Below, in pieces: positions 4,270 through 47,040 of a stretch of DNA of 64,000 bases. This DNA is from Macrostomum hystrix (taxonomy: Eukaryota > Animalia > Platyhelminthes). The notes beneath the pieces are model-generated. The model was not told the DNA's origin and searched no databases. It was given only the letters and a program-made list of their open reading frames with translations. Position numbers and translations under genes: made by a program. The stretch is from positions 1,116,001 to 1,180,000 of the forward strand of contig CATNEN010000033.1 in the NCBI GenBank assembly GCA_950097015.1, read 5' to 3'. Each line of letters starts with the position of its first letter. Positions within the stretch are counted from its first letter, which is position 1.

Positions 4270-5777
4270 TCAAAGCAGACTGCAGGCTCGGCTCCTCTGG
4301 CTTGGCCCAGCCGGCGCGCTGAATGGACGCTTCTTAACACCGCCCAGCCCTTCGCTGGCGTCGCCGACGTGTCGACGAGTCGCAGCCGCGGCTACAGCAG
4401 CAGCAGCCGCCGCGGACGAAGCGGCTGAATTAGCCGGCTCCGGCGACTCGGCAGCTTCATCAATGCGGCCCAGTGTGACAGTCAGGCGGCGTTTCAGGGC
4501 CGCCGCAGTCTCAGCCGCCGCCTCGGCCGCCTCCTCAGCCGCGGATTCGGCAGCCACCGACGTGGCGGCGCCGCTGCCAACAACGGCGATGACCTGCGCC
4601 AGCAGCTCCTCCTCTTGATCATCGTCAACATGAACAGCTTCAGGGGCAGCGGCTGCCGCTGCGGTTTCGGCCAGCACGACAGTCCTTGGCTGGCTCTGGT
4701 GCTCCGGGCATAGCCAGAGAATCTTGCCAGACGGCAGGTGGCATCGGCGAAGTCCGCTGGCGATGCTCGGATCGCGACGGCGCAGATACTCGCGCAAGGC
4801 GGCGTGCAGCTGGCGAAGATCGACCTCGGGACCGGCCCGCTCCGCCCCCGAGCGCAGGTGGTCGAGGAGGCGACCGCCGGCCAGCGGGTCGGCCGCGGTA
4901 TCCAGGCCGCTGCGCCGGCTGTGTCGAATGACGAGCATCAGGCGAAGCAGCAGCGGCGCCAGGCCCGCCAGCAGCTGCAGTGCGGCGTCGCGGCCGAGTC
5001 TGATTGGCAGGCCGGCGCCGGGGGCCGCGTGCCAGCCGCCCTCATGCTCGCACAGCAGGCGGAAGCGGTACAGGAAGCTGCTGGGCCCTTCGTCTTCTGG
5101 AAGAGGAAGATCGACATCGGGGGCGTCTTCAGCGAACGGCATCGTGCCGTCATCCGGGGTGCCCGCTCTGCTGGTCTGAAAGTGGAATGTTAGATGGGGG
5201 GTAGAATGTTCGAAGGGTGGAATGAAAAATTCTAATAATTGCATGAGGGCTGCAGGCAATGGCATCCATCATTTGGTGGAGCTGCAGCCAGCAGGAGGCA
5301 ATTCTGTTCATTTCGCTGACTCCTGAGCACACAGATACTTTACGCAGGCACACGCTCACACAGGTGCGTACATCTGCCCTGACTTTCTCATCGTCAGGCA
5401 GTGTACACTTCACTGTGCCTTGGAGGTCGGCCCTCAAGGGCGTAAATTGCACGACAAGCCCAAAAGATTTCCCTGCGCGGCTGCGTCCCAAATGATTGTG
5501 GCCTCGCCTCGGAATCGAGCTCAGGGACCTTGGTGCGAGAGGCGAACGCTCTGCCACTCACCCCCTGGTAAAAGGGTAGAACGGCAGAACGGTGGAATCA
5601 CAGAAAGGTGGAATGGCAGAGGAGAAAGGAGCTTCAGTCAGACGAGCACCCACAACTGAGGTCACTCACCGAGTCCGCATAGATGTCGGGCACGATGAGG
5701 CAGGGAAACTGCTCGGCCGGGTCCAGAAAGCCCGCGTACTGCCTGTAGACCTTGCGCTGCGCCAGCTCGATCAGCTC
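4270..5777 (-). CDS. Roco exons 37-38: C-terminal module and Ala-rich tail, stop TGA at 4270-4272
   Basis: [11 protein letters not shown]...[39 protein letters not shown]; acceptor tttcag|ACC at 5175. Confidence 0.8.
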
Positions 5778-8700
5778 CTGCCAGTTGGACAGTTCTTATC
5801 ATCTTACTATGAGTAGGATATTTGCTAGGAATACTTATATCATTTAAATTGCGTGTGATACTGGAGATTGATTAGAATGACTTAAAAGAGATTGATTAAA
5901 ATCTCCATGAGATAGATCTGTGTGACCTTCAAAAGATTTATCAGTGTGATCTCCAAGAGATTGATCAGTGTGATCTCCAAGAGATTGATCAGTGGATCAT
6001 TACCTGGAACATGGCTCCCCCAGCACCCGCAATGCTGCTGCTGCGCCGCTTTCGCAGGCTGTCTTTGCTGTCGGCCCTCCGGCTGGGGTAGTACTTCTCC
6101 AGGCACTCTGTGACGCTGTTGAGCAGCGTCTCGAAGCAGGAGTCGGTGCCTGCTTGGAAGTTCACCTTCGGATGGCCGAGCGACATCATGCCGATCTGTG
6201 CGACGGAGGATTGGGGATTTAGAAATTATTGAATGGGAAAATTCGTGATTTTTATAAGAATTTCGGTATCAAGAGATCGACAATGGAAGATTGGAACAAT
6301 AGAGGATCGGAACAATGGAAGATTGGAACAATGGAAGATTGGAACAATGGAAGATTGGAACAATGGAAGATTGGAGCAGCGTATGATGAGATTATTGGGG
6401 AAGATTTGGGGAAGAGGGATGTAAAGAAAAGTTTAGATAAGAGATTATATGGAAAATAAGTTATTATGGTAAAATACAACCTTGAATTCATAAATAGGAA
6501 TCTTATAAATTGTAGCCTAATATTTTGCTGTCAAATGCAGTCCTGAAGCAAGTTCAATTTTTTAAACCAATTAACTACAAACTCATTTCGGAGCAGTTGA
6601 TTGTCTTTTTGGTGCAGGCCAACCAATCAAAAGAGTGCTAATGTAAATAAACGACAGTGCTTTCACAATCTCCATAAATTTGATTACATTTCTCCTAGTC
6701 TGATAAAGCATACATCTTTTGGCGGCCTGTGTGTTTTTATACCTTCAACTGCATTAAATCTGCAGCCACTTTAAGCCGGCTTCACGCCACGAATCATAGT
6801 CTCGAGTGTTTGTGTTGTCTGATCCTCTTTTTTCCCTTAGTCTCCCAGCACAAATAAATGATTAGCCGCACGGCCCCCCAGGGCGAAAAAGAGGCTGTCT
6901 GTCAGTCAGGCTGTCTGTTTCGCACGGTTTGTGCGGCTGTAGTGATAGTACGAGCTGCATGGAATCATGCTGTTCTCAATGTGCATTTCAAATCAGGGAC
7001 TGCCCAAATATTGGAGAGTCCAAATATGAATTTACTATATCGATGATATAGTCAGGCTTATTCTCATTTTTTATCATACTGATGTTTATGCTACTCATAC
7101 TTTTGTTTGTTACTGCCTAATAGCAGTAATTCTATTCCTTACAATTCTATTTTTAATTTTTACTCGTTTGTCTAGCTGTACTTTTACGTTTGATTTGTAT
7201 TTTTCTGTGGCAATTTTAAGGGTGTACTTTTACCTCGAAATTTTATGCACTTTAATAATTCATTTGTACTTTTCTGTTGCTGTGTCGTGTACTTTTATGA
7301 ATTGTGAACCTTTTTGTGTAAAAAATTATCAATGAAGTGAACTTTTTCTCTATTCATTCAATAATCCCAAACAAGGTCATAACATTTGATATTTTTTACA
7401 TGCAGGCAACAAGCATGGTGACATTTTTTGAGTCGCAGGGTGTGGCTGGTGGGTGAAGTTTCACAGAATTAGCTCGTTGCAGAAAACCGACTTCAACTTA
7501 AGCCAGACTAACTGCAGACTGAAATCGAAACCAATCTGAGAAGTGTATATAGCTAGCTGCCTAGCCATGCCGCAACCTCGGCTTGGGAGCTGGAAACGGG
7601 CTCACTTTCGTTCCCAGTCTTGTATCGGCCGTACAGGATCGATTTCCCTTTCTCCCAAAAGGATCTATTTTCCCCTAAAACTGCAGCGCTGTATTTAAGC
7701 CGGCTACTACTCGCGCAGCTAAATGAATCCTTGAAATTCTTGAGCACTCGCCGCGCGGGGCCACCGGCTGTGGCTACTGGCTACTGAAATCCGCTTCCCA
7801 GCTTTAGTAGCACACCTGCGTGGGAGTGTGAGTAGAGGATTTAAGCCGTAGATATCGACGTATCACAAAATGCCTCCCCAGTTTCGCTTTTAACTTCCTT
7901 TCGTAGAATCTCGGCTGATCGCTTCTGCTACAGTGGCTCGAATTGAAATCAGACTGAGGTCCCTCACACATTAGAGCTGTTCGAATGTTTCAACTGTCCG
8001 CCAGTTATTCAGTTTTAGACATGTACTTTTGTTTGTTTAATAAAAATTTTTATTCAATGCGGCTCCTTATTTGGTAATATTTGGTCGCGGCTCAGCCACC
8101 GAGTTCGCTGATTGGCTGACGCTCTCTGCAGGCGAAGCCCAACCCCATCAAGCCGACTCTGATTGGCTGGGGGCCCGTCACAAATTAACGCAGCTTTTCT
8201 ATCGCTGGGTTTCTGGGTTTCTAGCACACTTCACTCCACAGATTTATTAGATCCAAAAATGATAAATCCATAGATTCCTTATCTGCCCAACTGTAAATAT
8301 AATGTGCCAAAAATTACCTTAACTATTCTCTCATTGGCTGAAACGAAAAATCGATTCTACCTACTGCAACTAATACTATTCATGCTTGCTAAGTTGCTCA
8401 TTTAGTTGCTCAGCATCATTCGATCTTTGAATGTCTAGATTGGCTTGGTTACCTCCGTGGACTCCCACAGCACTCCGGTGCCGACCACGCAAATGATCAT
8501 CGGCCTGTTGAGCGTCAGGTGAGCGAACCTGAACTCCATCTGACAGTTCTTGGAGGCCACGTACTGCAGTGAGATTGCGATGGGGTGTAGTTAGCTAGCT
8601 TAATGATAACAATAATAATAATATAACAATAATAATTTCTGGAGGGCTGCGTTCAACGGCACATTGCTGGTGACAGTATAACAGAAATTTCGATGACTCC

Positions 8701-11700
8701 TGAGCACGCACGCACACAGATACCGTACTCAGGCACACACTCATACAGGTGTGTACATCTGCCCTGACTTTCTCATCGTCAGGCAGTGTACACTTTCACT
8801 CTGCCTTGGGGGTTGGCCCTCAAGGGCGTAAATTGCACGACAAGCCCCCAAGCCTTGTCTCGGCGGCTGCACTTCAAATAAATGTGGTCTCGCCACGGAA
8901 TCGGGCTCAGCAACCTTGGTGCGAGAGGCAAACGCGTTAACCGCTCTGCTACTGACCCCCTAGTTAACTAACTTGCGTGGGAGCATTCTTTTTTCTGTCC
9001 ATTTTGCCCATTAACGTGGCGCTCCCACGATTTAGTCGCGTCACACTCACGGTCCGGTGCGGACTATGGCGCTAATGGAGGCTAAGTCAGTGCTATAAAT
9101 TTTCATCCACACAATGGCTAGGTGACTTTGATTTGCAAACGCAATTCTTAGAATCCCATTAGCCAAATATAGAAACATGAATGCACTTTAGTTCCGAGGA
9201 AGTCTGGAACCTGTTGCCAGTCACTCAGATGGCTTTCGCCGAAACAGAAACACATTTTTCCTGAGACCTACACCTAAGACAACTACGAGTATTAAGATAA
9301 ATTTCAAATCAATTCGATCTAAAACCTAAGACCAGCGAAATAATGGTAGAGTCAGTCTCACCTCATCAGATAGGCAAGCCACGACAACCTTGCAGGCCTT
9401 GAGTCCCTGGCAGAGGTCTTCGAACAAGCCTTTCTCTCCTAGCCGTTCCACGTCGATCCAGCAGGACAGTCCGCCCACCTCTTCCAGGTGTTTTTTAATC
9501 TTGCGCGGATCGCCGAAGCCCAAGGAGCGAGAGGTGGCCTTGCCGTGTCCGGCCTTCACAGCCTCGTGCGAGTTCGCCCAGCAGTAGCTGATGAACACGT
9601 CAGCGCGGCTGCTCACTCGCTGTGTGGTGTGGTGGCATGATTGTCAGGTTCAGTTAGCATTCACTTTCAAAGGCATACTTGATGGTAAAGACAGCACTGG
9701 AAGTTAGTCGGCTAAGTTTGATGTGCTTTGGTGTGTTGGGCATTTGATTTGAACTAAATCGCTGTGTCAGAATCTGTATTCCTATAATAATTTAGCTCTT
9801 GTTTTATAGAACACGTGTCACCTATTCATTATCAAAGCCTCTCAAAGAAAGCCAGCGGAACTGAAGTGCGAATCTCAGCAGCGTGTGTCGCAGAGCAGAA
9901 GATATTGATAAGAAACTCGACCCAGTCTCACTTTGATCTGCCACCAACAGCTTTGCTTGGGGACGGAAATCAAGGAAATCAAGGCTTCTGTTGATAGGAA
10001 CAGAAAATGTCTCAGAAAGAGTAAGGTTTCACATTATCGGCAAGCAAATTGGCCTTCTTAATTCGATAATAAGTTTAGGGAATATGAGTGCGGACACGTC
10101 GATTTTTTTTAAATACAATCTAATTTTAACTAAAATTCACATTTGAGCGTATTAGCTGCTGTCATACTACTCAGCAAGCGTACATTCAAGCAAAGGATTC
10201 ACCTTAACAAAATTAATCCCACTTCCAAATGAAGAGAGCAACGCGCCCATCCATATAAGTTTTCTCTCTTTCTCTTCTTAGTCCACTCATATTTTTTGTG
10301 CGAGATATCCATACGCCAGCCCAGCTGCAATCTGATTGGCTGGCGGGTTAGATCAGAGGGGCGAGAACCGGATCGGAGCGTGAGACGAAGTAGAAAAATT
10401 TCCGAGTTTAGGAAGAGAATACGCCAGGGACAGGGAGGCGGTGGGGCGAACTCGACAAAAGCGCCGCAGTTGTCAGAGAACACTATAATCTGCTCAAGCA
10501 TCACAATCTGCAGCAACAGGAGCTATGCTAGCCCACGTGGCTGTCAACGGCAGCTGTCTGAATGACTCCAACAGCTCGGCGGGTCCCGCCGGCGGCGCCG
10601 CCAATGTCTATCTGTACATTGCGTGCGTCCTGAGCTATCTGAATGCCCTAACCAACGGCTTCTCTCTTGTGGTGTTCGTCCTGGACAAGAAAAATGTCAT
10701 CATGGGCCGTCTGCTCCTGCTTCTATCGCTCTCTGAGACTGTGCTGAACATCGGCTTCGCAGCCAACCTCACCGTCATGCTCTCCGTCATGGCAGACGCG
10801 GGCAGGCAGACCTACGACAGCACGCTAAGACCTCAAATCCTCACCTGCACCTTCTTCCTCTCGTTCGTCGTCGCCAACGCCTTCATTATGGTGCGCAATT
10901 GGTGCCTCGTGATGATCGCCGGCAGCCGTTGCGAGGTGGTCAGCAACCCCTTCAGCACCCGCAGTGGCCAGCTGTTCAGTCACCGCCGCAGTCAGGTGTG
11001 CTACGCGGTGACTCTCATCCTATCACTGTTGGTGTGCGCCCCGCGCTTGTTTGAGTTCACCTGGACAATCTGCGAGTTCCCGCCGGCTGCTGGCGAGGAC
11101 AATTCAACTGGCACCGTTTACAGCCTGACCACCGCCACGCATCACATCCTGGACAAGAACCCGTCCTACAGCCACTACAAGACTCTGCTGGTGTTTCCGC
11201 TGCAGACGATTGCTCCAATTTTTCTCATTAGCGGCCTGTCGCTGGTGATCATCTTCATCTTGCGCAGGCGGCGTCTTCTCCAGCAGAACAGCGGCGGCGG
11301 AGCCGGTGGTGGCGGCGGCGGCGGTAACGTCAATAGCGGCGCCGGAGGCGGAGTCAGTGCTGGCGGCGGCAGCGGCAGCCGCAGCCAGGATGCAGCCACA
11401 AAGACCGTCATGATCCTGATGTTCTCGTTCATCATCTGCGAGCTGCCCACTTTTCTGTTCTTCATCCTGAACCAGACAATCTTCGCCTCCATGCGCGGCT
11501 TCACGGAGATCCGGATGCACACCACCTTCCTGGCCAACATCATGCTCAGCGCGGACAGCTTCACTAACTTCATCATCTACAGCAGCACCAGCAACACCTT
11601 CAGGGAGACGGTGCGTCGCATGTTCCACCTGCCCGATAGCCGGAGAGGCCGCAGCAACAACTACAATTATTACAACAACCACCTGCACAACAACAACTAC

Positions 11701-41700: not shown

Positions 41701-44700
41701 GTGGCTGGTTTGGCTGGGGTGGCTGGGGTGGCTCGGGTGGCTGGGGTGGCTCGGGTGGCTGGTTTTGCTAGAGTGGCTGGGGTGGCTAGGGTGGCAGGTT
41801 TGGCTTGTTTTTGCTGGCGTGGCTAGTTTGGCTGCGGTGGCTGGTTTGGCTGGGGTGGCTGGTTTGGCTGGGGTGGCTGGGATGGCTGGTTTGGCTGGGG
41901 TGGCTGGGGTGGCTGGGGTGGCTGGGGTGGCTGGTTTGGCTTGTTTTTGCTGGGTGGCTGGTTTGGCTGGGGTGGCTGGGATGGCTGGTTTGGCTGGGGT
42001 GACTGGGGTGGCTGGGGTGGCTGGGGTGGCTGGGGTGGCTGGTTTGGCTGGGGTGGCTGGTTTGGCTGGGGTGGCTGGTTTGTCTGGGGTGGCTTGTTTG
42101 GCTGGGGTGGCTGGGATGGCTGGTTTGGCTGGGGTGACTGGGGTGGCTGGGGTGGCTGGGGTGGCTGGGGTGGCTGGGGTGGCTGGGGTGGCTGGTTTGG
42201 CTTGTTTTTGCTGGGTGGCTGGTTTGGCTGGGGTGGCTGGGATGGCTGGTTTGGCTGGGGTGGCTGGGGTGGCTGTTGTGGCTGGGGTGGCTGGGGTGGC
42301 TGGTTTGGCTTGTTTTTGCTGGGTAGCTGGTTTGGCTGGGGTGGCTGGGGTGGCTGTTGTGGCTGGGGTGGCTGGGGTGGCTGGTTTGGCTTGTTTTTGC
42401 TGGGTGGCTGGTTTGGCTGGGGTGGCTGGTTTGGCTGGGGTGGCTGGTTTGGCTGGGGTGGCTGGTTTGGCTTGTTTTTGCTGGGTGGCTGGTTTGGCTG
42501 GGGTGGCTGGTTTGGCTTGTTTTTGCTGGGTGGCTGGTTTGGCTGGGGTGGCTGGTTTGGCTGGGGTGGCTGGGGTGGCTGGGGTGGCTGGGGTGACTGG
42601 GGTGGCTGGGGTGGCTGGTTTGGCTGGGGTGGCTGGGGTGGCTGGGGTGGCTGGTTTGGCTTGTTTTTGCTGGGTGGCTGGTTTGGCTGGGGTGGCTGGT
42701 TTGGCTGGGGTGGCTGGGGTGGCTGGGATGGCTGGGGTGACTGGGGTGGCTGGGGTGGCTGGTTTGGCTGGGGTGGCTGGGGTGGCTGGGGTGGCTGGTT
42801 TGGCTTGTTTTTGGTTGGTTTGGCTGGTTTGGTTGGTTTGGGGTGGCGGGGATGGCTGGTTTGGCTGGGGTGGCTGGGGTGGCTGGGGTGGCTGGGGTGG
42901 CTGGGATGGCTGGGGTGGCTGGGGTGGCTGGGATGGCTGGTTTGACTGGGGTGGCTGGGGTGGCTGGTTTGGCTGGGGTGGCTGGGGTGGCTGGGGTGAC
43001 TGGGGTGGCTGGGGTGGCTGGTTTGGCTGGGGTGGCTGGGGTGGCTGGGGTGGCTGGGGTGGCTGGGGTGGCTGGGGTGGCTGGGGTGGCTGTTGTGGCT
43101 GGGGTGGCTGGGGTGGCTGGTTTGGCTTGTTTTTGCTGGGTGGCTGGTTTGGCTGGGGTGGCTGGGATGGCTGGTTTGGCTGGGGTGGCTGGGGTGGCTG
43201 GGGTGGCTGGGGTGGCTGGTTTGGCTTGTTTTTGCTGGGTGGCTGGTTTGGCTGGGGTGGCTGGGGTGGCTGGTTTGGCTGGGGTGACTGGGGTGGCTGG
43301 GGTGGCTGGTTTGGCTGGGGTGGCTGGGGTGGCTGGGGTGGCTGGGGTGGCTGGTTTGGCTGGGGTGGCTGGGGTGGCTGGGGTGGCTGGGGTGGCTGGG
43401 GTGGCTGGGGTGGCTGGTTTGGCTGGGGTGGCTGGGGTGGCTGGGGTGACTGGGGTGGCTGGGGTGGCTGGTTTGGCTGGGGTGGCTGGGGTGGCTGGGG
43501 TGGCTGGTTTGGCTTGTTTTTGCTGGGTGGCTGGTTTGGCTGGGGTGACTGGGGTGGCTGGGGTGGCTGGTTTGGCTGGGGTGGCTGGTGGCGGATTTGG
43601 CAGTGGTGATGGTTTGGAGAGGTGGATAGACACACAGGGCTCACAATATACTGCATGTCCTTGAAGCGCAGCAGGAAGCGAGTCTCAGAAACAAGCTTTT
43701 TTACGGTAGGCCAGGCGTCGTCCTCAGTGAAGGGAATGTCGAAGATCAGCATGACGCATTTCATTGTTGTCAGGACAATCGTTGGCGGCACGGACAATGA
43801 ACGCAGCTAAAGTAAATTAATTGTTATGCTATGAGCTTGTTCTGAAATCTGGTCACCAGTAAAGGCTTTGCTTCAGCACTAGCTTACCTCTGAGAAGTCC
43901 GCCTTTGTGCAGCGATCTAGGGCATCGATGGCATACATCTACACGGATGAGTAAGAAGTAGCATTGATTTTTAGTGACGTAGAAAAATACTTGATTTGTG
44001 CAATGAGCACAGTGATCGCAGGGAATTCGTGACTACTCACATAGTCGTGCTCAGCCCAGTATTGCATCTGAGCCTGCACATTGGAATCTATTTTTACTTC
44101 GCGTAGAACAGCTTCGAACACCTGTAATCAATTGAGCCAATTGTTATTAATCAATCACTCCATCCTCTAACCAAGACACACCTCACTCAATCCTCGGACC
44201 CACAACACACCCACCTCACTCTCTTTTCTAACCTGAAACCACCAATCTCACTCAATTCTTTGACCCCAAGACACCCACCTCAATTCATCCAATACATCCC
44301 AAGACCACCACCATTCGCTGACTCACAGCACACCCACCCCACTATAACCTCTAACCCCGACGCACCCCACCTCAATCGTTTTCTAACCCCCAACACACCC
44401 ACCTTACTCCTTTTTCTAACCCCCAACACACCCACCTACTTTAATGTTTTGACCCCTAGACACCCACCTCACTCCATCCGCTGACTCACAACACACCCAC
44501 CTCACTACATCCTCTAACCCCCAACACACCCACCTACTTTAATGTTTTGACCCCTAGACACCCACCTCACTCCATCCGCTGACTCACAACACACCCACCT
44601 CACTACATCCTCTAACCCCCAACACACCCACCCTACTCCATTTTCTATTGATCTTTTCAACCGTTTGCATTTCAAAATCGGCACTGACCCAGTCCTGCTT

Positions 44701-47040
44701 GAATCCGCCCACCGGCACAGCAATCAAACTAATTGGGAAGTGCGTGATATCGGCGCACTGAATCGACTGCACGTAGCGCCACTGGTGTGGAAAATCTTTG
44801 TCGTAGCAGCTGAAGATCGGCAGGGCGGTTAATTGTACTTGATTGTATGTTTTTAATTAATAATTGATGATTGCCTGGAGATCGGCTCGTGCAACCAACC
44901 TATTTAGATGCTCCTTCTCCAGGTGTTCTTTCATGTTCTCAACCTGATCTTTGAGCATATTCTCCAAGTCGGATTTCAGCGAGGCCACATTCTCGACGCC
45001 CTTCTCGCTGCTGACGGTGGCCACGAGGAGGAGCGGCGCTTCAAACACCTGCGATTAAAGTCCAGTAACCCGTGTGCATTCTTCTCCCATTCTAATGACT
45101 TATCTTTGTTTGGCCCTTATTAGGGCCGTTTTGATTGTTACTTGTCTTCTGTGCTTCTTTAGTATGGCGGATTTTAAAATAATATACAGCTGCCCCTTAT
45201 TGGCCCGGGAAATATATGTGATCTCTTACTGTCGGGTGTCTAACTTTCTAGTTCTGATTTGAGAGTTCAAACTCTGAGTTTTCTGCTTGTGCCCAGCGAC
45301 TAAAGCTTCGGACCTGCTGGCTCCCGATTGCTTCAGTACACTTAGCTGTAGACTGGGTTCCAATATTAGCGCGGGGCTGCTTCGCCAGTCCATGGACTGC
45401 AAAGCTGTACACAGCCTTTGGAAGCATCGCGCAATAGCTGCGTTTTCAATATCACCGTTTTCACTCAGACTTTCACGAGAAAGAAAGTAATTATGAGCAG
45501 ACTTGTCACGTGACAGTTCAGATTTGATTGGACGGCCTGGCTGGCCACTCACCGCTCCCCGCACAGCGTCAATCATTCGCATTATCTCTAGCTGGGGATT
45601 TTCAGTGCGCTCCGCGTCAATCACCAGCACAAAGCCGGCGGTGTTGGACATGAACAGCGAGCTGTACACCTGCAGGGCCATTGTGTAAGAGAACCCGTTA
45701 AAAGTTTGAAGAGTTAAGCAGAGTTCAGGAAGCAATTAAAGAGCTAGTGATCGGCTCACCAAATCGGCACGCATTTCGAAAACATTCATATCCAGATTGC
45801 CGAAAATGCCTGAGAGCACCTGAAAAGACGGCTGCTGCTGCTGCGTTACCTTGGCAGCTGACTTCGATGACGGCCTTGAAGACGACGCCGAAGAGATGGC
45901 TGAAAGCGCCATAGACGCGATGCTGACTGGTACAGCGGGGTCGCAGATGACCGCCAGCTTCACAGGGAGGTTTGCCACGGTCGACACGGCACCTGACAAC
46001 ACAGGTGAATTTGGATGAAGGGGCTGGATGGAATGCCAAACAGTGGGGACTCTCGGCAGCTGTTTTCACTCTTTTTTTCGTGTATCGATCGGATGCCGGG
46101 AGTTGAAAGCCTCTGTGATTTATAATTTGTACGCAACTTGGCGATTTCGAAAGGTCAGGCTAGTGCATGAGTAATGATTATTTTCATTTCCGAGGGTTTT
46201 TTAGCTTTTAGCGAGGAGACAATTCCACTGACCAATGATCATACACAGGCACACTCACACAGGGTGTGTACATCTGCCCTGACTTTCACTTTCACTTTTC
46301 CCTGCGTTTTGAAGGCTGGCCCTCAAAGGCGTACACCACTGACACCACTGGGCTGGCGAAAGGGCCGCAGTCGGGAACTGTTTCTCACCGTCGATAAACT
46401 GGAAGGCCGGGTCGAACTGAACAGCAAAGTTCAGCTGCCTGGAGCCGCAGTGGGTCAGCTGGGTGCCCAGCATGCTGACGGACTGCAGGTCGCGGCAGTG
46501 CTTGCCCAGGTAGTGCAAGCTCCGCTCAGTCAGCTGCTCGCAGCCGTCCAGACTCAGCAGCAGGAGGCGCGGGAAGGCGCGGGCCAGGTGAGCCACGCCA
46601 TCGTCGCGAAGGTGCCGACAGCCGACGCAGGAGACTCGGGTAACTCTAGCTCGAGCCTCATCCGGCACAGCTGTCTCCAGCAGGTGGAAAACCTCGTCTG
46701 TCAGCTGCTCGACGCCATCGAACTCCAGGTGAAACTCAACGCCCTTGTCGGCAAACCAGGTTGGCAGCTTTGCCTTGTGAATGGTGATGAGAGTTTCGTT
46801 GGGTATTTCGTTGGGCACTTACATGCTGCAACGACGCATCACAAGCTTCATACTTATGCAGGGCTTCACAAAGACACACAATGAAGCCAAATGTATTTCA
46901 TATGCGTGTAATCCGTTCAAAGAACCGAATTATGACTTAAATGACGGGAAGCTTACCAGCAGCTTGCGAAGCGGAATTTGCTCCTGAACCTCCAGCTCAT
47001 TGTAGAAATTTTCAAATGTCAATCGTTTCACAGCGGACAT
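4270..47040 (-). CDS. Giant tandem Roco protein, 38 exons, ~3030 aa: LRR-pseudoRoc-MTBD-like-COR-linker-LRR/EF-Roc-COR-TIR-TIR-Cterm
   Basis: Hand-built exons (minus): 47040-46957, 46773-46389, 45992-45760, 45669-45553, 45048-44900, 44809-44689, 44121-44041, 43938-43888, 43806-43645, 41637-41554, 41463-41320, 40918-40661, 40569-40366, 39662-39227, 38508-38351, 37910-37194, 36903-36730, 36182-35963, 35797-35706, 34056-33816, 29935-29805, 29721-29656, 27690-26534, 25321-25156, 25072-24667, 19771-19665, 19581-19503, 19150-19004, 17250-16892, 16291-16144, 16043-15926, 14806-14623, 13805-13472, 9619-9362, 8563-8453, 6195-6004, 5777-5670, 5175-4270. Donor and acceptor phases match at every junction; there is one extra base within exon 23. 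Confidence 0.8.
5317..5565 (-). mobile_element. tRNA-derived SINE, family A
   Basis: Minus-strand head GGGGGTGAGTGGCAGAGCG...GCTCGATTCC; homologous to 8694-8960, 22279-22460 and 46245-46330. Confidence 0.8.
5925..6380. repeat. Two short arrays flanking Roco exon 36: 24-bp x3 (5925-5995) and 16-bp GGAACAATGGAAGATT (~6280-6375)
   Basis: Direct reading. Confidence 0.8.
6004..9619 (-). CDS. Roco exons 34-36: second TIR domain (TIR_2/SARM1-like)
   Basis: [50 protein letters not shown]. Confidence 0.9.
8694..8960 (-). mobile_element. tRNA-derived SINE, family A
   Basis: Head GGGGGTCAGTAGCAGAGCGG...GCCCGATTCC; body shared with the 5317 copy. Confidence 0.8.
10525..11853 (+). CDS. Intronless class A (rhodopsin-like) peptide-type GPCR, nested antisense in Roco intron 33 (9620-13471)
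   Basis: Seven hydrophobic segments; N-terminal sequons (NGS, NDS). [13 protein letters not shown] at the DRY position, APRLFEF after TM4, ICELP in TM6, DSFTNFIIY in TM7. FMRFamide-receptor/Srw-like by recall. Confidence 0.9.
   Translation: MLAHVAVNGSCLNDSNSSAGPAGGAANVYLYIACVLSYLNALTNGFSLVVFVLDKKNVIMGRLLLLLSLSETVLNIGFAANLTVMLSVMADAGRQTYDSTLRPQILTCTFFLSFVVANAFIMVRNWCLVMIAGSRCEVVSNPFSTRSGQLFSHRRSQVCYAVTLILSLLVCAPRLFEFTWTICEFPPAAGEDNSTGTVYSLTTATHHILDKNPSYSHYKTLLVFPLQTIAPIFLISGLSLVIIFILRRRRLLQQNSGGGAGGGGGGGNVNSGAGGGVSAGGGSGSRSQDAATKTVMILMFSFIICELPTFLFFILNQTIFASMRGFTEIRMHTTFLANIMLSADSFTNFIIYSSTSNTFRETVRRMFHLPDSRRGRSNNYNYYNNHLHNNNYTMLSRDANAMRRAEAAAAAAAAAAAAAAATAVNSDDPALVPLNWQHLSSE
13472..14806 (-). 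CDS. Roco exons 32-33: first (degenerate) TIR domain
   Basis: DVTLIFCS...[12 protein letters not shown]...[22 protein letters not shown]...KPFVL gives a TIR_2-like layout; His sits where Glu is usual. Confidence 0.7.
15315..15600. repeat. 23-bp minisatellite (GTTGAGCGCTGGTTGAACTAATG)
   Basis: Direct reading. Confidence 0.95.
15926..19771 (-). CDS. Roco exons 26-31: second COR domain
   Basis: [68 protein letters not shown]: classical COR motifs. Confidence 0.9.
16310..16630. repeat. 23-bp minisatellite (AAAATGGTAGGATATTAAAGTAC)
   Basis: Direct reading; degrades toward 16860. Confidence 0.95.
17285..17620. repeat. 24-bp minisatellite (CCAGGTGGAAAACCAGTTAAATGT)
   Basis: Direct reading. Confidence 0.95.
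18427..18998 (+). mobile_element. tRNA-derived SINE, family B, copy 1
   Basis: Head GGGGGCGAGTGGGTCAGCGG (A box) ... AGTTCGATTC (B box); (AGAT)n tail; flanking CTCACCTT duplication; near-identical to 56868-57460. Confidence 0.88.
19155..19430. repeat. Degenerate 9-bp AGTAGACAA array
   Basis: Direct reading. Confidence 0.75.
19840..21240. repeat. ~1.4-kb purine-rich satellite (GAGTGAGGGAAGGA variants)
   Basis: Direct reading. Confidence 0.97.
22279..22460 (-). mobile_element. SINE family A, 5'-truncated copy
   Basis: Shares TGACTCCT..GCACAC..CAGGCA, CTGACTTTCTCATCGTCAGGCAGTGTACAC and TAAATTGCACGACAAGCCC; head absent. Confidence 0.75.
22965..23375. repeat. TGTC-rich 18/22-bp minisatellite (TGTCTGTGCTGGGTGTC)
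   Basis: Direct reading. Confidence 0.95.
24235..24640. repeat. 20-bp minisatellite (CCGCTTACCCTGATGACACC), ~20 copies
   Basis: Direct reading. Confidence 0.97.
24667..25321 (-). CDS. Roco exons 24-25: intact Roc GTPase domain
   Basis: [15 protein letters not shown] (G1), TDGIDI (G2), WDFAGQ (G3), [19 protein letters not shown] (G4). Confidence 0.95.
25345..25765. repeat. 22-bp minisatellite (TGCACATTCTACATCAACTCGA), ~19 copies
   Basis: Direct reading. Confidence 0.97.
26280..26430. repeat. 9-10-bp GGAAACCT(G) array
   Basis: Direct reading. Confidence 0.9.
26534..27690 (-). CDS. Roco exon 23: typical bacterial/SDS22-like LRR array interrupted by a Gly-rich loop and an EF-hand; carries a +1 frameshift
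   Basis: LxxLxLxxNxIxxLP repeats ([38 protein letters not shown]). EF loop [12 protein letters not shown]. The exon is 1157 nt, one base longer than the flanking phases require. Confidence 0.85.
27725..28840. repeat. 30-bp minisatellite (CATCACCTGTCCTTCAGTGAGCCCTCCTTC), ~37 copies with higher-order variants
   Basis: Direct reading. Confidence 0.97.
29170..29520. repeat. 35-bp pyrimidine-rich minisatellite
   Basis: CCTGTCTCTAATCCCTCTCCTTCTTATCTAATCTT, period 35. Confidence 0.93.
29656..36903 (-). CDS. Roco exons 17-22: linker between the two Roco modules, including a Tudor/Agenet-like beta-barrel
   Basis: [31 protein letters not shown] in exon 36182-35963. Phase-consistent splicing from 36903 through 29656, including across the TTLL-containing intron (TGG A|gtgagt ... 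ctccag|GC). Confidence 0.65.
29955..30485. repeat. 24-bp minisatellite (CACAGAGAATTAGAGATTTTGGGT), ~22 copies
   Basis: Direct reading. Confidence 0.97.
31473..33044 (+). CDS. Tubulin-tyrosine-ligase-like ATP-grasp enzyme, most like polyglycylase TTLL10; nested antisense in Roco intron 20 (29936-33815)
   Basis: [84 protein letters not shown]. First in-frame ATG at 31473; an unrecognised 5' exon cannot be excluded. Confidence 0.85.
   Translation: MCLRWPDQQQRHHQLQPRQEKVARVDKVKSTRLDKKSSDSRVRNSNQAPAAASVTPFSVPEKLLRYFAQSQSADFLASQQLQWLPSGGFVCAYSNGGADVREFFAHLGWPHLLGVASGKMCGHAGKRNQPGICGPSNRLWHCPCVQNALSAMPDYAFFWGSLSSTAFALCMAASQQRSRPLVMNRIPWVTLISNKSQLALTCMAHKHSGSALCLQSHIPATFILDRDTDRNSLRLMARRLLEMHPVWIVKPQNFAKGEGIQLAFREDGETAMVRSLASDRWGFSKVVQCYMTEPMLLGGKKFDLRVFLLLVTTGSGLLAFYHTGYVRLALNNFTVCEKKRLDTHLTNQAVQAKQFNYEANKEDTIWTVEQMNRYLNRQSTSEFSNDWTVRQLHPTVKLLVGTLVDALVQRVQNDRRSSAAKQPKPQWERHPCRNTFSLLGLDVLIDEVGKPWLIEANADPALSRQTLALERLLPSVTSEAFGLAMEIIYRCHGADPQAPAPAAQDLAFLQNFQPLGYYQIVDN
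33440..33730 (-). mobile_element. SINE family C copy
   Basis: Homologous to 36270-36535 (CAGATGTGCAGCCGACA, CGGCTGTTCAGTCCATGGAC, AGCTG.GTGAACTGAA.CAAT); degenerate tRNA-like head near 33640-33690. Confidence 0.65.
34200..34705. mobile_element. MITE-like element, diverged copy 3
   Basis: Shares GGCATCGTCG.GATATTCA, GTCGGACGGCTTTGAAAG and TATGGTGGAATTTC..GAAA..GGTCATT...GTAGGCAG with the other copies. Confidence 0.45.
34705..35215. repeat. ~24-27-bp minisatellite GnAATAGCGTGGTCTTTTCC with variable G runs
   Basis: Direct reading. Confidence 0.95.
35267..35663 (+). mobile_element. tRNA-derived SINE, family B, diverged shorter copy 3
   Basis: Same head (GGGGGTGAGTGGGTCAGCGGCTAA) and 3' end (GTGCCCC..GCCCCCTGCAAATA); possible GAGCCAG duplication. 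Confidence 0.8.
36270..36535 (-). mobile_element. SINE family C copy with tRNA-like head
   Basis: Minus strand TAGCCTAGTGTGTAGAG...GGTTCGATTC (A/B boxes); related fragments at ~30640-30680, ~45385-45430 and ~57800-57945. Confidence 0.7.
37194..40918 (-). CDS. Roco exons 12-16: first COR domain and following Cys-rich/beta region
   Basis: [14 protein letters not shown]...[15 protein letters not shown] (COR-A signature). [15 protein letters not shown]...LWRTGMHV (COR-B). Then CxxxC, CxxC and CxxC Cys pairs. Confidence 0.75.
37920..38285. repeat. 60-bp minisatellite, ~6 copies
   Basis: CCCGATACCTCACACCCTGCCCG...CACTC(C/T)AAG recurs at the same position on successive 60-nt lines. Confidence 0.95.
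38535..39165. repeat. 9-bp GGCTGG(GGT/TTT/AGT) satellite
   Basis: Direct reading; same family as 41675-43590. Confidence 0.95.
39690..40265. repeat. 24-bp GAAAATAGGGAAATGGGG(A/G)(G/T)(A/G)TTA array followed by 9-bp GGGA(A/G)ATTG array
   Basis: Direct reading. Confidence 0.95.
41080..41275. repeat. 33-bp minisatellite (CACACCCACCTCACTCCATACTCTAACCCTCAT)
   Basis: Direct reading. Confidence 0.9.
41320..43938 (-). CDS. Roco exons 8-11: dynein heavy-chain stalk-tip / microtubule-binding-domain-like segment
   Basis: Spliced sequence [37 protein letters not shown]...[22 protein letters not shown]...[21 protein letters not shown] follows the dynein MTBD pattern ALDxLxxxDIxE(L/V)(K/R)SMxxPPxxVxxVMEAVCIL...WxxAKKLLxDxxFL...LCxWVxAMxxY (pattern recalled, not searched). 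Confidence 0.75.
41675..43590. repeat. ~1.9-kb 9-bp GGCTGGGGT satellite with higher-order GGTTTGGCTTGTTTTTGCTGGGT blocks
   Basis: Direct reading; fills Roco intron 9. Confidence 0.97.
44170..44640. repeat. Degenerate C/A-rich repeat (CACACCCACCTCACT / CTAACCCCCAA units)
   Basis: Direct reading. Confidence 0.8.
44689..45992 (-). CDS. Roco exons 3-6: degenerate first Roc (pseudo-GTPase) domain
   Basis: Roc-like order of elements: [15 protein letters not shown] (G1 position), [26 protein letters not shown] (G3/switch II), PLLLVATV (G4). Lacks GxxxxGK[ST] and DxxG. Confidence 0.65.
46245..46330 (-). mobile_element. SINE family A fragment
   Basis: CAGGCACACTCACACAGGGTGTGTACATCTGCCCTGACTTTC...GGCCCTCAAAGGCGTA. 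Confidence 0.6.
46389..47040 (-). CDS. Roco exons 1-2: start ([28 protein letters not shown]) and FBXL/AMN1-type Cys-containing LRRs
   Basis: ATG at 47040, 84-nt exon ending CTG|gtaagc. LRR units [40 protein letters not shown]. The exon 2 acceptor is uncertain. Confidence 0.7.

What the first reader, a model, noticed from the sequence alone, without database searches (positions are those of the whole stretch)
4270..47040. One ~3030-aa protein with two Roco modules in tandem, ending in twin TIR domains
Seen: 38 exons join with consistent splice phases, including the junctions between the N-terminal LRR-Roc-COR module and the C-terminal LRR-Roc-COR-TIR-TIR module, with no intervening stop or new start. 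Established: characterised animal Roco proteins (LRRK1/2, DAPK1, MFHAS1) carry a single Roc-COR, and Roc-COR activity is regulated by dimerisation. Inference: this is a covalently fused pseudo-dimer in which a dead Roc-COR partners an active one and controls a TIR effector. That would be a kinase-free Roco signalling/immune machine with possible microtubule and Ca2+ inputs. I do not recall a description of this architecture, but did not search.
Basis: partly seen in the sequence, partly recalled or inferred. Interest (0 to 1): 0.92.

Follow-up and report, generated by a model that had tools for sequence, protein, structure and literature searches.

The report
Flatworm double-Roco, twin-TIR giant protein
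This is one real, expressed flatworm gene for a protein of about 3,070 residues, a member of an uncharacterised invertebrate LRR-Roc-COR-TIR-TIR family, and its N-terminal half hides a second, dead copy of the Roc-COR GTPase switch.

Summary
The observation largely holds. A 39-exon gene on the minus strand (47040 to 4270) encodes about 3,073 residues.

**One transcript.** Spliced RNA contigs from three runs join the exons between the two halves. One 6,347-nt contig runs from the N-terminal half deep into the C-terminal half. Macrostomum lignano and the monogenean Cichlidogyrus casuarinus have collinear loci. A 2,414-aa M. lignano database protein already joins both halves.

**One flaw.** Exon 24 has a 1-base frame break at a GGGG run (27109-27106). 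It is probably an indel variant or an assembly error.

**Domains.**
- The C-terminal half is LRR, EF-hand-like, Roc (intact motifs), COR, TIR, TIR and a conserved unknown C-terminal domain.
- The N-terminal half is LRR, a Roc-like fold lacking all GTP-binding motifs, a dynein stalk/microtubule-binding-like insert, and a divergent COR. Profile-profile and structure comparisons support this.

**Novelty.** The LRR-Roc-COR-TIR family is already described in silico in anemones, Aplysia and placozoans. My searches found it in many spiralians. I found no description of the hidden N-terminal pseudo-Roco module.

The parts
4270..47040 (-). Whole gene: 39 coding exons, about 3,073 codons (one X at a frame break). 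ATG at 47040-47038, stop at 4272-4270.
   Evidence: Exon table with phases and splice sites. Collinear with M. lignano locus L001 and proteins P0001 and P0009.
46389..47040 (-). Exons 1-2 (47040-46957, 46773-46389): N-terminus and F-box/RNI-type LRR domain (aa 1-156).
   Evidence: Pfam LRR_At5g56370, E 3.6e-4. P0009 starts with the same MSAVK... sequence and the same exon 1/2 join. The model matches FBXL proteins. The domain is conserved in at least 8 mollusc family members.
44689..45992 (-). Exons 3-6 (45992-45760, 45669-45553, 45048-44900, 44809-44689): pseudo-Roc, a Ras-like fold without P-loop, DxxG or NKxD/THxD motifs (aa about 158-363).
   Evidence: hhalign against the canonical Roc profile: probability 92%, E 6.3e-7, 82 columns. 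The pseudo-Roc HMM hits the canonical Roc of an unrelated Roco protein at 5.5e-6. The AF2 model of the M. lignano orthologue aligns to the LRRK2 Roc domain (6vno) at Z 12.0, rmsd 2.5 A. Roco proteins are the top Foldseek hits. Motif scan finds none of the three motifs.
40661..44121 (-). Exons 7-12 (44121-44041, 43938-43888, 43806-43645, 41637-41554, 41463-41320, 40918-40661): insert resembling the dynein stalk and microtubule-binding domain (aa about 364-600).
   Evidence: Orthologue P0001 residues 32-185 match axonemal dynein heavy chain 6 residues 2780-2927, E 3.1e-7. Pfam MT stalk is sub-threshold, E 0.0077.
38351..40918 (-). Exons 12-15 (40918-40661, 40569-40366, 39662-39227, 38508-38351): divergent COR1, with COR-A-like and COR-B-like parts (aa about 590-890).
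   Evidence: hhalign of a cleaned COR1 alignment against a cleaned COR2 alignment: E 9.1e-6, 187 columns, A and B parts in order. The COR2 profile itself recruits the N-terminal COR1 of nine family proteins, most of them molluscan. Sub-threshold Pfam hits at the expected places: COR-A, E 0.0013 and 0.00095; COR-B, E 0.08.
35706..37910 (-). Exons 16-19 (37910-37194, 36903-36730, 36182-35963, 35797-35706): Cys-rich segment and middle domains of unknown fold (aa 890-1290).
   Evidence: Exon 16 found only 3 relatives among 1.84 billion representative proteins. The segment is conserved in M. lignano, C. casuarinus and the annelid Paralvinella.
28891..34056 (-). Exons 20-23 (34056-33816, 29935-29805, 29721-29656, 29028-28891): conserved linker between the two modules (aa 1291-1482).
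   Evidence: RNA contigs from runs X9, X10 and X2 carry all three internal joints. Their loose ends match 35706-35735 and 27660-27689. The linker profile finds 42 family proteins.
26534..27690 (-). Exon 24: LRR2, a Gly-rich low-complexity tract, an EF-hand-like loop, and more LRRs.
   Evidence: Pfam LRR_14 5.3e-14, LRR_8 2e-11, EF-hand_6 0.0051 (below cut-off).
27088..27110 (-). Frame break: GGGG at 27109-27106. The LRR frame ends at TAG 27090-27088, and the downstream frame is open from 27110.
   Evidence: Three-frame translation. DNA alignment with M. lignano shows one extra base here. M. lignano protein P0008 reads the tract in one frame. No fitting intron exists.
24667..25321 (-). Exons 25-26 (25321-25156, 25072-24667): Roc2, with [12 protein letters not shown] and THCD motifs.
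   Evidence: Pfam Roc 1.5e-16 and Ras 5.1e-10. Motif scan. 95-96% identical to M. lignano.
15926..19771 (-). Exons 27-32 (19771-19665, 19581-19503, 19150-19004, 17250-16892, 16291-16144, 16043-15926): COR2. The intron after exon 31 is GC-AG.
   Evidence: Pfam COR-A 1.2e-9; COR-B 2.4e-9 and 1.1e-8. The GC donor is homologous to a GT donor in M. lignano.
13472..14806 (-). Exons 33-34 (14806-14623, 13805-13472): TIR1, with His at the position of the catalytic Glu (PCSQH).
   Evidence: Pfam TIR_2 4.7e-5. Motif read from model2.
6004..9619 (-). Exons 35-37 (9619-9362, 8563-8453, 6195-6004): TIR2, with Glu kept at the catalytic position (NCQME).
   Evidence: Pfam TIR_2 1.7e-6. Alignment to the MyD88 TIR places this Glu opposite MyD88's Gln. 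Two TIR hits per protein across the family.
4270..5777 (-). Exons 38-39 (5777-5670, 5175-4270): conserved C-terminal domain (aa about 2790-2960) and an Ala-rich tail.
   Evidence: The profile finds the domain after the twin TIRs in 52 family proteins. Invariant residues are C, E, W, H ... W, L, C, H. AF2 model pLDDT 75.7, with no significant fold match.

Best explanation
**What it is.** One gene of a macrostomid-like flatworm encodes a cytosolic-type protein of about 3,070 residues. Its domain order is:
1. F-box-type LRR
2. pseudo-Roc (a G-domain fold with no nucleotide-binding motifs)
3. a dynein stalk/microtubule-binding-like insert
4. a divergent COR
5. a Cys-rich middle region and a conserved linker
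6. LRR, then an EF-hand-like loop, then more LRRs
7. Roc with intact P-loop, DFAG and THCD motifs
8. COR
9. TIR1 (catalytic Glu replaced by His)
10. TIR2 (Glu kept)
11. a conserved domain of about 165 residues with unknown fold

It is the flatworm orthologue of a widespread invertebrate LRR-Roc-COR-TIR-TIR family. In that family the N-terminal LRR, pseudo-Roc and COR are also present at least in molluscs, and the N-terminal COR in an annelid.

**How it likely works (inferred, not shown).** The live Roc-COR works as a GTP-dependent conformational switch, as in other Roco proteins. The switch controls how the two TIR domains associate. TIR2 supplies NAD-cleaving or cyclase chemistry, and TIR1 serves as its non-catalytic partner. 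The dead Roc-COR is a built-in regulatory or dimer-like partner, or a scaffold. The LRRs, the EF-hand-like loop and the microtubule-binding-like insert provide inputs or localisation.
For: **Single transcript.**
- Spliced RNA contigs from three runs cross the module junction.
- One 6,347-nt contig has 798 nt on the N-terminal side and 4,972 nt on the C-terminal side of the laid stretch.
- The M. lignano locus is collinear.
- M. lignano protein P0009 has the same start and contains both halves.
- The Cichlidogyrus locus is collinear from the N-terminal LRR and pseudo-Roc through to Roc2.

**C-terminal domains.** Pfam hits and motif scan.

**Pseudo-Roc.**

**COR1.**

**Dynein-like insert.**

**Family spread, twin TIR and C-terminal domain.**

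**TIR Glu.**. A preprint shows that Glu-bearing TIRs from animals make cADPR. Its figure legend lists LRR, Roc and COR among the host-protein domains (10.64898/2026.04.20.719644).

**Context.** Flatworms lack TLRs (PMC8609888).
Against: - The assembled sequence has a frame break in exon 24. Taken literally, translation would stop after LRR2.
- Evidence for the N-terminal Roc-COR is profile-level and model-level only. Pfam finds nothing above its cut-offs. Direct BLAST of the N-terminal half against the C-terminal half is not significant. The pseudo-Roc model has only moderate confidence (pLDDT about 50-80).
- No experiment or model here bears on pairing of the two modules, GTP binding, TIR activity or microtubule binding.
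- RNA evidence covers only introns 19-23. The other junctions rest on homology and splice signals.
Confidence: 0.65

Rival explanations
1. Two neighbouring genes. One would be an N-terminal LRR, pseudo-Roc and COR gene. The other would be a separate LRR-Roc-COR-TIR-TIR gene. They would be joined only by read-through, operon-type transcription or assembly chimeras.
For: - A 3.9-kb intron between the halves holds an expressed opposite-strand TTL gene.
- M. lignano protein P0008 is a shorter prediction that starts within the equivalent of exon 21.
- From my own knowledge, M. lignano uses trans-splicing and operons.
Against: - The contigs are spliced at GT-AG sites in phase through five consecutive introns, in three runs.
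- Exon 24 has no start codon near its 5' end.
- The linker exons are conserved in 42 family proteins that carry the C-terminal module.
- The same order is kept in Monogenea, an annelid and molluscs.
Confidence: 0.05
2. The copy in this window is a broken allele or pseudogene. The extra G is real, so this copy makes only a protein of about 1,680 residues that ends after LRR2. The Roc-COR-TIR-TIR part is not translated from it.
For: - The frame break is in the assembly.
- No intron fits.
- The M. lignano contig has its own break in the same tract.
Against: - The downstream 1,390 codons are open across 15 more exons. They are 87-96% identical to M. lignano in Roc2 and COR2.
- RNA contigs continue across the site.
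- One RNA contig stops exactly after the third G, as expected if reads carry both run lengths (an inference).
- P0008 reads the tract in one frame.
- G-rich tracts are prone to errors in assemblies.
Confidence: 0.15
3. The N-terminal pseudo-Roc-COR is only an evolutionary relic or a passive scaffold. Regulation would then work as in other Roco proteins: two polypeptides dimerise through COR2, and there is no intramolecular pairing with COR1.
For: - Characterised Roco proteins dimerise between chains (established knowledge).
- COR1 is highly divergent.
- About 1,170 residues of other domains separate COR1 from COR2.
Against: - The module has been kept, with recognisable profile similarity, in flatworms, an annelid and molluscs. 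This argues for a selected function.
- That function need not be pseudo-dimerisation.
Confidence: 0.35

Closest known systems
Invertebrate LRR-Roc-COR-TIR proteins: 'Novel Gene 1' of sea anemones (PMC5094078) and the Aplysia ROCO-type 'TLRs', one with an EF-hand (PMC9334734). Possibly also ecTIR-DC 14, the ~3,000-aa LRR+TIR proteins of placozoans (PMC6321704).
   Same: - LRR, Roc GTPase, COR, then TIR_2, with no kinase.
- Very large proteins.
- F-box/LRR-like N-terminal repeats, as the BLAST hit of NG1 also showed.
- An EF-hand before Roc, as in Aplysia LOC101845043.
- The window's Roc region finds these proteins directly. Aplysia LOC101848126 is P0065 and Trichoplax TRIADDRAFT_58269 is P0072.
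- The twin TIRs and the C-terminal domain are shared.
   Different: - Those papers list domains only. None that I could read mentions a second, degenerate Roc-COR.
- The papers I read do not describe a twin TIR or a conserved C-terminal domain in these ROCO proteins.
- Mollusc and placozoan members carry an MBT repeat where the flatworm has other middle domains.
- The dynein-like insert was detected only in Macrostomum.
- The placozoan passage names LRR and TIR but not Roc or COR, so its link to this family is my inference.
- The defining paper for ecTIR-DC (Gerdol et al. 2017) was not available to me.
LRRK2, LRRK1, MFHAS1 and bacterial Roco proteins
   Same: - The LRR-Roc-COR core. The C-terminal module has all G motifs.
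- The model of the N-terminal LRR plus pseudo-Roc aligns to LRRK2 residues 1176-1517 and to the LRRK2 Roc domain at Z 12.
- It also aligns to GbpC, roco10, TORNADO1 and MFHAS1.
   Different: - No kinase or WD40 domain.
- The output domains are two TIRs.
- There are two Roc-COR units in one chain, and the first has no nucleotide-binding motifs.
TIR NAD-consuming enzymes (SARM1, plant TNL receptors, bacterial Thoeris ThsB)
   Same: - TIR2 keeps the Glu three residues after the conserved Cys.
- The TIRs sit at the output end of a nucleotide-switch and LRR protein, as in plant TNLs.
   Different: - The switch is a Roco GTPase, not a STAND ATPase.
- The TIRs are a covalent pair in which one lacks the Glu.
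- Activity is untested.
Dynein heavy chain stalk and microtubule-binding domain
   Same: About 150 residues align to DNAH6 residues 2780-2927, E 3.1e-7.
   Different: - The segment is inserted between a pseudo-GTPase and a COR domain, with no AAA+ motor.
- Microtubule binding is untested.
- It is not detectable in the monogenean or in mollusc relatives.

Membership tests
Roco proteins (C-terminal module) | Roc GTPase domain with P-loop, switch II and G4 motifs | tested here: met
   Pfam Roc 1.5e-16 on exon 26. Motifs [12 protein letters not shown] and THCD are present.
Roco proteins (C-terminal module) | COR domain directly after Roc | tested here: met
   Pfam COR-A 1.2e-9 and COR-B 2.4e-9 and 1.1e-8 on exons 30-31.
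Roco-like module (N-terminal) | G-domain (Roc-like) fold after an LRR | tested here: met
   hhalign probability 92%, E 6.3e-7. The model aligns to the LRRK2 Roc domain at Z 12.0, rmsd 2.5 A, and to M. barkeri Roco2 at Z 11.6. Roco proteins are the top Foldseek hits. The model is of the M. lignano orthologue and has moderate pLDDT.
Roco-like module (N-terminal) | Nucleotide-binding motifs (GxxxxGK[ST], DxxG, [NT][KH]xD) | tested here: not met
   None of the three is present in residues 158-335. They are also absent in the aligned flatworm and mollusc sequences. It is therefore a pseudo-GTPase, not a Roc in the enzymatic sense.
Roco-like module (N-terminal) | COR domain after the G domain | tested here: met
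   Cleaned COR1 profile against cleaned COR2 profile: E 9.1e-6, 187 columns. The COR2 profile recruits the N-terminal COR1 regions of nine family proteins, most of them molluscan. Pfam hits are only sub-threshold. COR1 is separated from the pseudo-Roc by an insert of about 230 residues.
Invertebrate LRR-Roc-COR-TIR family (NG1, Aplysia ROCO-TIR; possibly ecTIR-DC 14) | LRR, Roc, COR and TIR in one protein without a kinase, with sequence relatedness to named members | tested here: met
   The Roc region retrieves 70+ such proteins, including Aplysia LOC101848126 and Trichoplax TRIADDRAFT_58269. Linker, TIR1, TIR2 and C-terminal domain profiles match them.
Invertebrate LRR-Roc-COR-TIR family (NG1, Aplysia ROCO-TIR; possibly ecTIR-DC 14) | Formal assignment to ecTIR-DC class 14 as defined by Gerdol et al. 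2017 | not testable with these tools
   The defining paper is not held. The link rests on the description in PMC6321704.
Catalytic (NAD-cleaving) TIR domains | Conserved catalytic Glu | tested here: met
   TIR2 has NCQME, with the Glu opposite MyD88's Gln in the alignment. TIR1 has His at that place. The identity of the position as catalytic comes from my own knowledge of the WCxxE motif.
Catalytic (NAD-cleaving) TIR domains | NADase or cyclase activity | not testable with these tools
   This needs expression and an assay.
Dynein microtubule-binding domain | Sequence similarity across stalk CC1, MTBD and CC2 | tested here: met
   P0001 residues 32-185 against DNAH6 residues 2780-2927, E 3.1e-7. 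Pfam MT is below its cut-off, E 0.0077.
EF-hand | Canonical Ca-binding loop scoring above the Pfam cut-off | tested here: inconclusive
   EF-hand_6 E 0.0051, 16.9 bits against a cut-off of 25. Similar weak hits occur in Mercenaria P0021. The loop reads [12 protein letters not shown].
Toll-like receptors | Extracellular LRR, one transmembrane helix, one TIR | not tested
   No transmembrane or signal-peptide prediction was run. The Roc-COR between the LRR and the TIRs makes a TLR topology implausible. Surveys report no TLRs in flatworms.

The most novel reading that the evidence does not exclude
The whole invertebrate LRR-Roc-COR-TIR-TIR family would be built as an intramolecular Roco pseudo-dimer. 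An ancient, nucleotide-free Roc-COR pairs with the live Roc-COR in the same chain. GTP turnover in one G domain would then set the geometry of a covalent catalytic/non-catalytic TIR pair that makes an NAD-derived signal. In macrostomid flatworms, an acquired dynein-type microtubule-binding insert would tether or gate this switch on microtubules.
Probability: 0.2. Interest if true: 0.85.

Novelty: new variant of a known kind. Interest (0 to 1): 0.62.

Why it matters
**For Roco biology.** Roco GTPases such as LRRK2 are thought to work through nucleotide-dependent dimerisation of Roc-COR. A natural protein that carries one dead and one live Roc-COR in a single chain would be a useful model for how the two halves of a Roco dimer talk to each other.

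**For innate immunity.**
- Flatworms have no Toll-like receptors (PMC8609888). This family is therefore a candidate for a cytosolic LRR-plus-TIR sensor in these animals.
- It parallels plant TNL receptors but uses a GTPase switch.
- The covalent TIR pair has one Glu-bearing and one Glu-less domain. It is a ready test case for the recent claim that many animal TIRs are enzymes.

**Practical points.**
- M. lignano is a transgenic and RNAi-tractable model, so the ideas can be tested.
- Database annotation of these proteins as 'non-specific serine/threonine protein kinase' is wrong, because they have no kinase domain.

Tried and rejected
1. A naive splice-site and codon-score chain over the region gave 53 exons. 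It included false ones in minisatellites and on the antisense strand of the nested TTL gene. I replaced it with a homology-guided and RNA-guided model.
2. Direct BLASTP of the N-terminal module against the C-terminal module was not significant. The best hit, E 0.13, was at the COR-A 'LHxMG...DPxW' motif.
3. My first hhalign of COR1 against COR2 gave E 1e-36. I rejected it as contaminated, because each jackhmmer alignment had pulled in segments of the other module. I redid it with cleaned alignments and got E 9e-6.
4. I enumerated GT/GC..AG pairs for an intron that would repair the frame in exon 24. Many pairs fit by phase. None has this gene's donor pattern or a pyrimidine tract.
5. Three word-indexed protein searches aimed partly at transcript-derived full-length proteins of the window's own species found none.
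6. The C-terminal domain model has no significant match in the PDB or in Swiss-Prot models.
7. The flatworm middle 'barrel' against the MBT repeats of mollusc relatives was not significant, probability 1.7%.
8. The Cichlidogyrus N-terminus shows no dynein match.
9. Gerdol et al. 2017 could not be read.
Full report
**1. What is in the sequence**

The window is eukaryotic. Short GC-rich coding blocks lie on the minus strand between introns full of minisatellites, and those repeats mimic ORFs of up to 771 codons. Pfam scans of single exon translations gave clear hits for the downstream half:
- LRR_14/LRR_8 at 27088-27714
- LRR plus a weak EF-hand at 26463-27110
- Roc (1.5e-16) at 24589-25098
- COR-A and COR-B at 16891-17304 and 16078-16338
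- TIR_2 at 13442-13834 and at 9329-9643

The upstream half gave only an F-box-type LRR at 46258-46818.

**2. Relatives and organism**

Exon 16 (37062-37910) has only three relatives among 1.84 billion representative proteins.
- P0001 is from Macrostomum lignano assembly GCA_002269645.1. It is 79% identical to my model.
- P0002 is from the monogenean Cichlidogyrus casuarinus, assembly GCA_045687925.

The window therefore comes from a flatworm close to, but not the same as, the sequenced M. lignano copy. P0001 aligns collinearly to the window from 44124 to about 26967, across the proposed junction. The M. lignano locus L001 is collinear with the model from the pseudo-Roc to COR2, where the fetched DNA ends. 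The Cichlidogyrus contig has the N-terminal LRR plus pseudo-Roc, an assembly gap, and then the rest through Roc2, all on one strand.

A later search returned P0009, a 2,414-aa M. lignano UniRef protein. It starts MSAVK...LRKLL|AKLPTWF, exactly like my exons 1 and 2, and it runs through both modules to the second TIR.

**3. RNA evidence**

I laid four runs on 28101-34100. In X9, X10 and X2, which come from one study, contigs join 29028|29656, 29721|29805 and 29934/5|33815/6. All three have CT..AC ends, which is GT..AG on the minus strand.

The loose ends at 28890 and 34056 read on into sequences that occur once in the window, at 27660-27689 and 35706-35735. Five consecutive introns across the module boundary are therefore confirmed.

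The X2 contig is 6,347 nt long. It has 4,972 nt beyond 28890 and 798 nt beyond 34056. One assembled mRNA thus reaches from exon 16 or 17 far into the C-terminal module.

The fourth run (X5, from another study) showed only the nested TTL gene.

**4. Gene model**

I combined splice signals, phases, M. lignano conservation and the RNA joints. This gave 39 exons from the ATG at 47040 to the stop at 4270-4272, 9,226 nt in all.
- 37 introns are GT-AG with a strong GT[GA]AG donor.
- The intron after exon 31 is GC-AG. M. lignano has GT at the same place.

**5. The flaw in exon 24**

Exon 24 (27690-26534) changes frame. The LRR frame ends at TAG 27090-27088. The frame that carries VPLPK, the Gly-rich tract, the EF-hand and all later exons is open only from 27110.
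- Against M. lignano, the window has one extra base in a G run at 27109-27106.
- The M. lignano contig has its own break further along the same (GGN)n tract.
- M. lignano protein P0008 reads the tract in one frame.
- No intron fits. The only phase-compatible candidate has a GTGCCG donor and a G-rich acceptor, unlike all 38 real introns.
- One RNA contig (X10, record 1) ends 583 nt beyond 28890. That is window position 27107, after the third G. This is where a de Bruijn contig would stop if the reads held both GGG and GGGG. This point is an inference.

I read the protein with an X at the break. I regard an indel polymorphism or an assembly error as most likely (about 0.75), and a truly broken copy as possible.

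**6. The C-terminal module**

- Roc2 has [12 protein letters not shown] and THCD and is 95-96% identical to M. lignano.
- COR2 follows, then two TIR domains.
- In TIR2 the motif is [13 protein letters not shown]. The Glu aligns opposite the Gln of the non-catalytic MyD88 TIR. By the known WCxxE pattern, this is the catalytic position.
- TIR1 has PCSQH there instead.
- After the TIRs comes a domain of about 165 residues with invariant C, E, W, H ... W, L, C, H. It follows the twin TIRs in 52 of 82 collected family proteins.
- Its AF2 model (pLDDT 75.7) matches no known fold. The one notable hit is a weak match to the C-terminus of the plant Roco protein TORNADO1.

**7. The N-terminal module**

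*LRR.* Exon 2 is an F-box/RNI-type LRR.

*Pseudo-Roc.* I aligned residues about 158-330 with the equivalent regions of M. lignano, Cichlidogyrus and seven mollusc proteins.
- This alignment matches the family's canonical Roc profile at probability 92%, E 6.3e-7.
- The match is in register from beta3 to alpha4: MNVFEMRAD against FSVWDFAGQ, and [10 protein letters not shown] against [10 protein letters not shown].
- An HMM of the region hits the true Roc of an unrelated Roco protein at 5.5e-6.
- I built an AF2 model of M. lignano residues 1-345 from a 13-row alignment. pLDDT is about 85 in the LRR and 50-80 in the G domain.
- The model aligns to the LRRK2 Roc domain at Z 12.0 and 2.5 A, and to Rab GTPases and M. 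barkeri Roco2 at Z 11-12. As LRR plus Roc, it aligns to LRRK2 residues 1176-1517.
- The best Foldseek hits in Swiss-Prot models are Dictyostelium roco10 and GbpC. TORNADO1 and MFHAS1 also appear, each aligned across both domains.
- No P-loop, DxxG or NKxD/THxD motif exists in any aligned species.

*Dynein-like insert.* P0001 residues 32-185 match the stalk and microtubule-binding domain of dynein heavy chain 6, E 3.1e-7.

*COR1.* This covers residues about 590-890.
- Pfam gives only sub-threshold hits, but at the right places in four orthologues: COR-A 0.0013 and 0.00095, and COR-B 0.08 twice.
- The canonical COR2 profile recruits the N-terminal regions of nine family proteins, most of them molluscan.
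- A COR1 alignment restricted to regions upstream of Roc, compared with a COR2 alignment restricted to regions downstream of Roc, gives E 9.1e-6 over 187 columns. The COR-A and COR-B parts are in order.

The tandem-Roco reading is therefore supported. It is a feature of the family, not only of this gene.

**8. The family and the literature**

The Roc region retrieves LRR-Roc-COR-TIR_2 proteins from these groups:
- molluscs
- annelids
- nemerteans
- brachiopods
- rotifers
- a hemichordate
- the nematode Plectus
- Trichoplax

Many of them are auto-named 'non-specific serine/threonine protein kinase', although the window protein and the family members I scanned show no kinase domain.

The architecture has been noted in silico in several papers:
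- 'Novel Gene 1' of sea anemones has LRR, GTPase, a low-scoring COR and TIR_2, with an FBXL-like BLAST hit (PMC5094078).
- Two Aplysia 'TLRs' have ROC and COR, one with MBT and one with an EF-hand (PMC9334734).
- The placozoan LRR+TIR proteins of about 3,000 aa are classed ecTIR-DC 14 (PMC6321704). That passage does not name Roc or COR, so equating them with this family is my inference.
- A 2026 preprint shows that Glu-bearing animal TIRs make cADPR in E. coli. It lists LRR, Roc and COR among the host-protein domains.
- TLRs are absent from flatworms (PMC8609888).

I found no paper that mentions a second, degenerate Roc-COR. A search for Roco together with pseudoGTPase gave zero papers. The library is incomplete, however, and the key paper by Gerdol et al. 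(2017) was not readable.

**9. Mechanism**

Shown:
- the architecture
- intact motifs in Roc2 and dead motifs in the pseudo-Roc
- the TIR2 Glu and the TIR1 His
- conservation of every block across phyla

Inferred from established Roco and TIR biology:
- Roc2-COR2 acts as a GTP-dependent switch.
- TIR-TIR association forms the active site, so a covalent pair of one catalytic and one non-catalytic TIR could act as an asymmetric unit.
- The pseudo-Roc-COR1 is a regulatory partner. Whether it pairs intramolecularly with Roc2-COR2 is open. I put that at about 0.2-0.3.

**10. Verdict**

This is a real, expressed, single gene. It is a flatworm member of a known but uncharacterised invertebrate Roco-TIR family. 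The hidden N-terminal pseudo-Roco module, and in Macrostomum the dynein-like insert, appear to be undescribed. The claim of novelty holds only for the tandem-Roco aspect. The pseudo-dimer mechanism remains a hypothesis.

Noticed in passing
window 31450-33434 (+ strand), inside intron 20: A nested, intronless tubulin-tyrosine-ligase-family gene lies on the opposite strand (Pfam TTL 3.7e-34). Unspliced RNA contigs of 1.6-2.0 kb cover it at depth 25-52. A 533-aa gene sits at the same nested position in M. lignano (L001 10242-11873).
   Followed up: partly
window 10525-11853 (+ strand), inside intron 34 between the TIR1 and TIR2 exons: A second nested opposite-strand ORF of 442 aa is a rhodopsin-family GPCR (7tm_1 9.1e-12, Srw-type 5.4e-11).
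   Followed up: partly
window 30642-30681 and 33698-33730: Short pieces of RNA contigs with high depth (about 43-65) have loose ends on both sides. They lie within intron 20 and the end of exon 20. They may be a dispersed repeat or a shared motif from other transcripts.
   Followed up: no
window introns, e.g. 43640-41650, 40320-39700, 39220-38530, 35280-34640, 30490-29950, 28870-27720, 23420-22930, 21310-19800: Long minisatellite arrays are open in all three frames and imitate ORFs of 150-770 codons. A score-based exon chain picked several of them as false exons.
   Followed up: partly
L001 about 14340-14520 (M. lignano contig NIVC01003779): The M. lignano orthologue has its own frame break in the same Gly-rich tract. 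This break truncated the deposited gene model P0001 at that point. Database models P0008 and P0009 handle the tract in two other ways.
   Followed up: partly
window 4393-5175 (-), C-terminal domain: The only notable structural lead for the conserved C-terminal domain is a weak Foldseek hit to residues 1214-1380 of the plant Roco protein TORNADO1 (E 1.0, probability 0.25). If real, the domain would be an ancient Roco-associated module.
   Followed up: no
family proteins P0009, P0015, P0020, P0042 and others: Many members of this kinase-less family carry the automatic UniRef name 'non-specific serine/threonine protein kinase' or names such as 'LRRK1' or 'roco5'. This is very likely annotation transfer from Roco kinases.
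   Followed up: no
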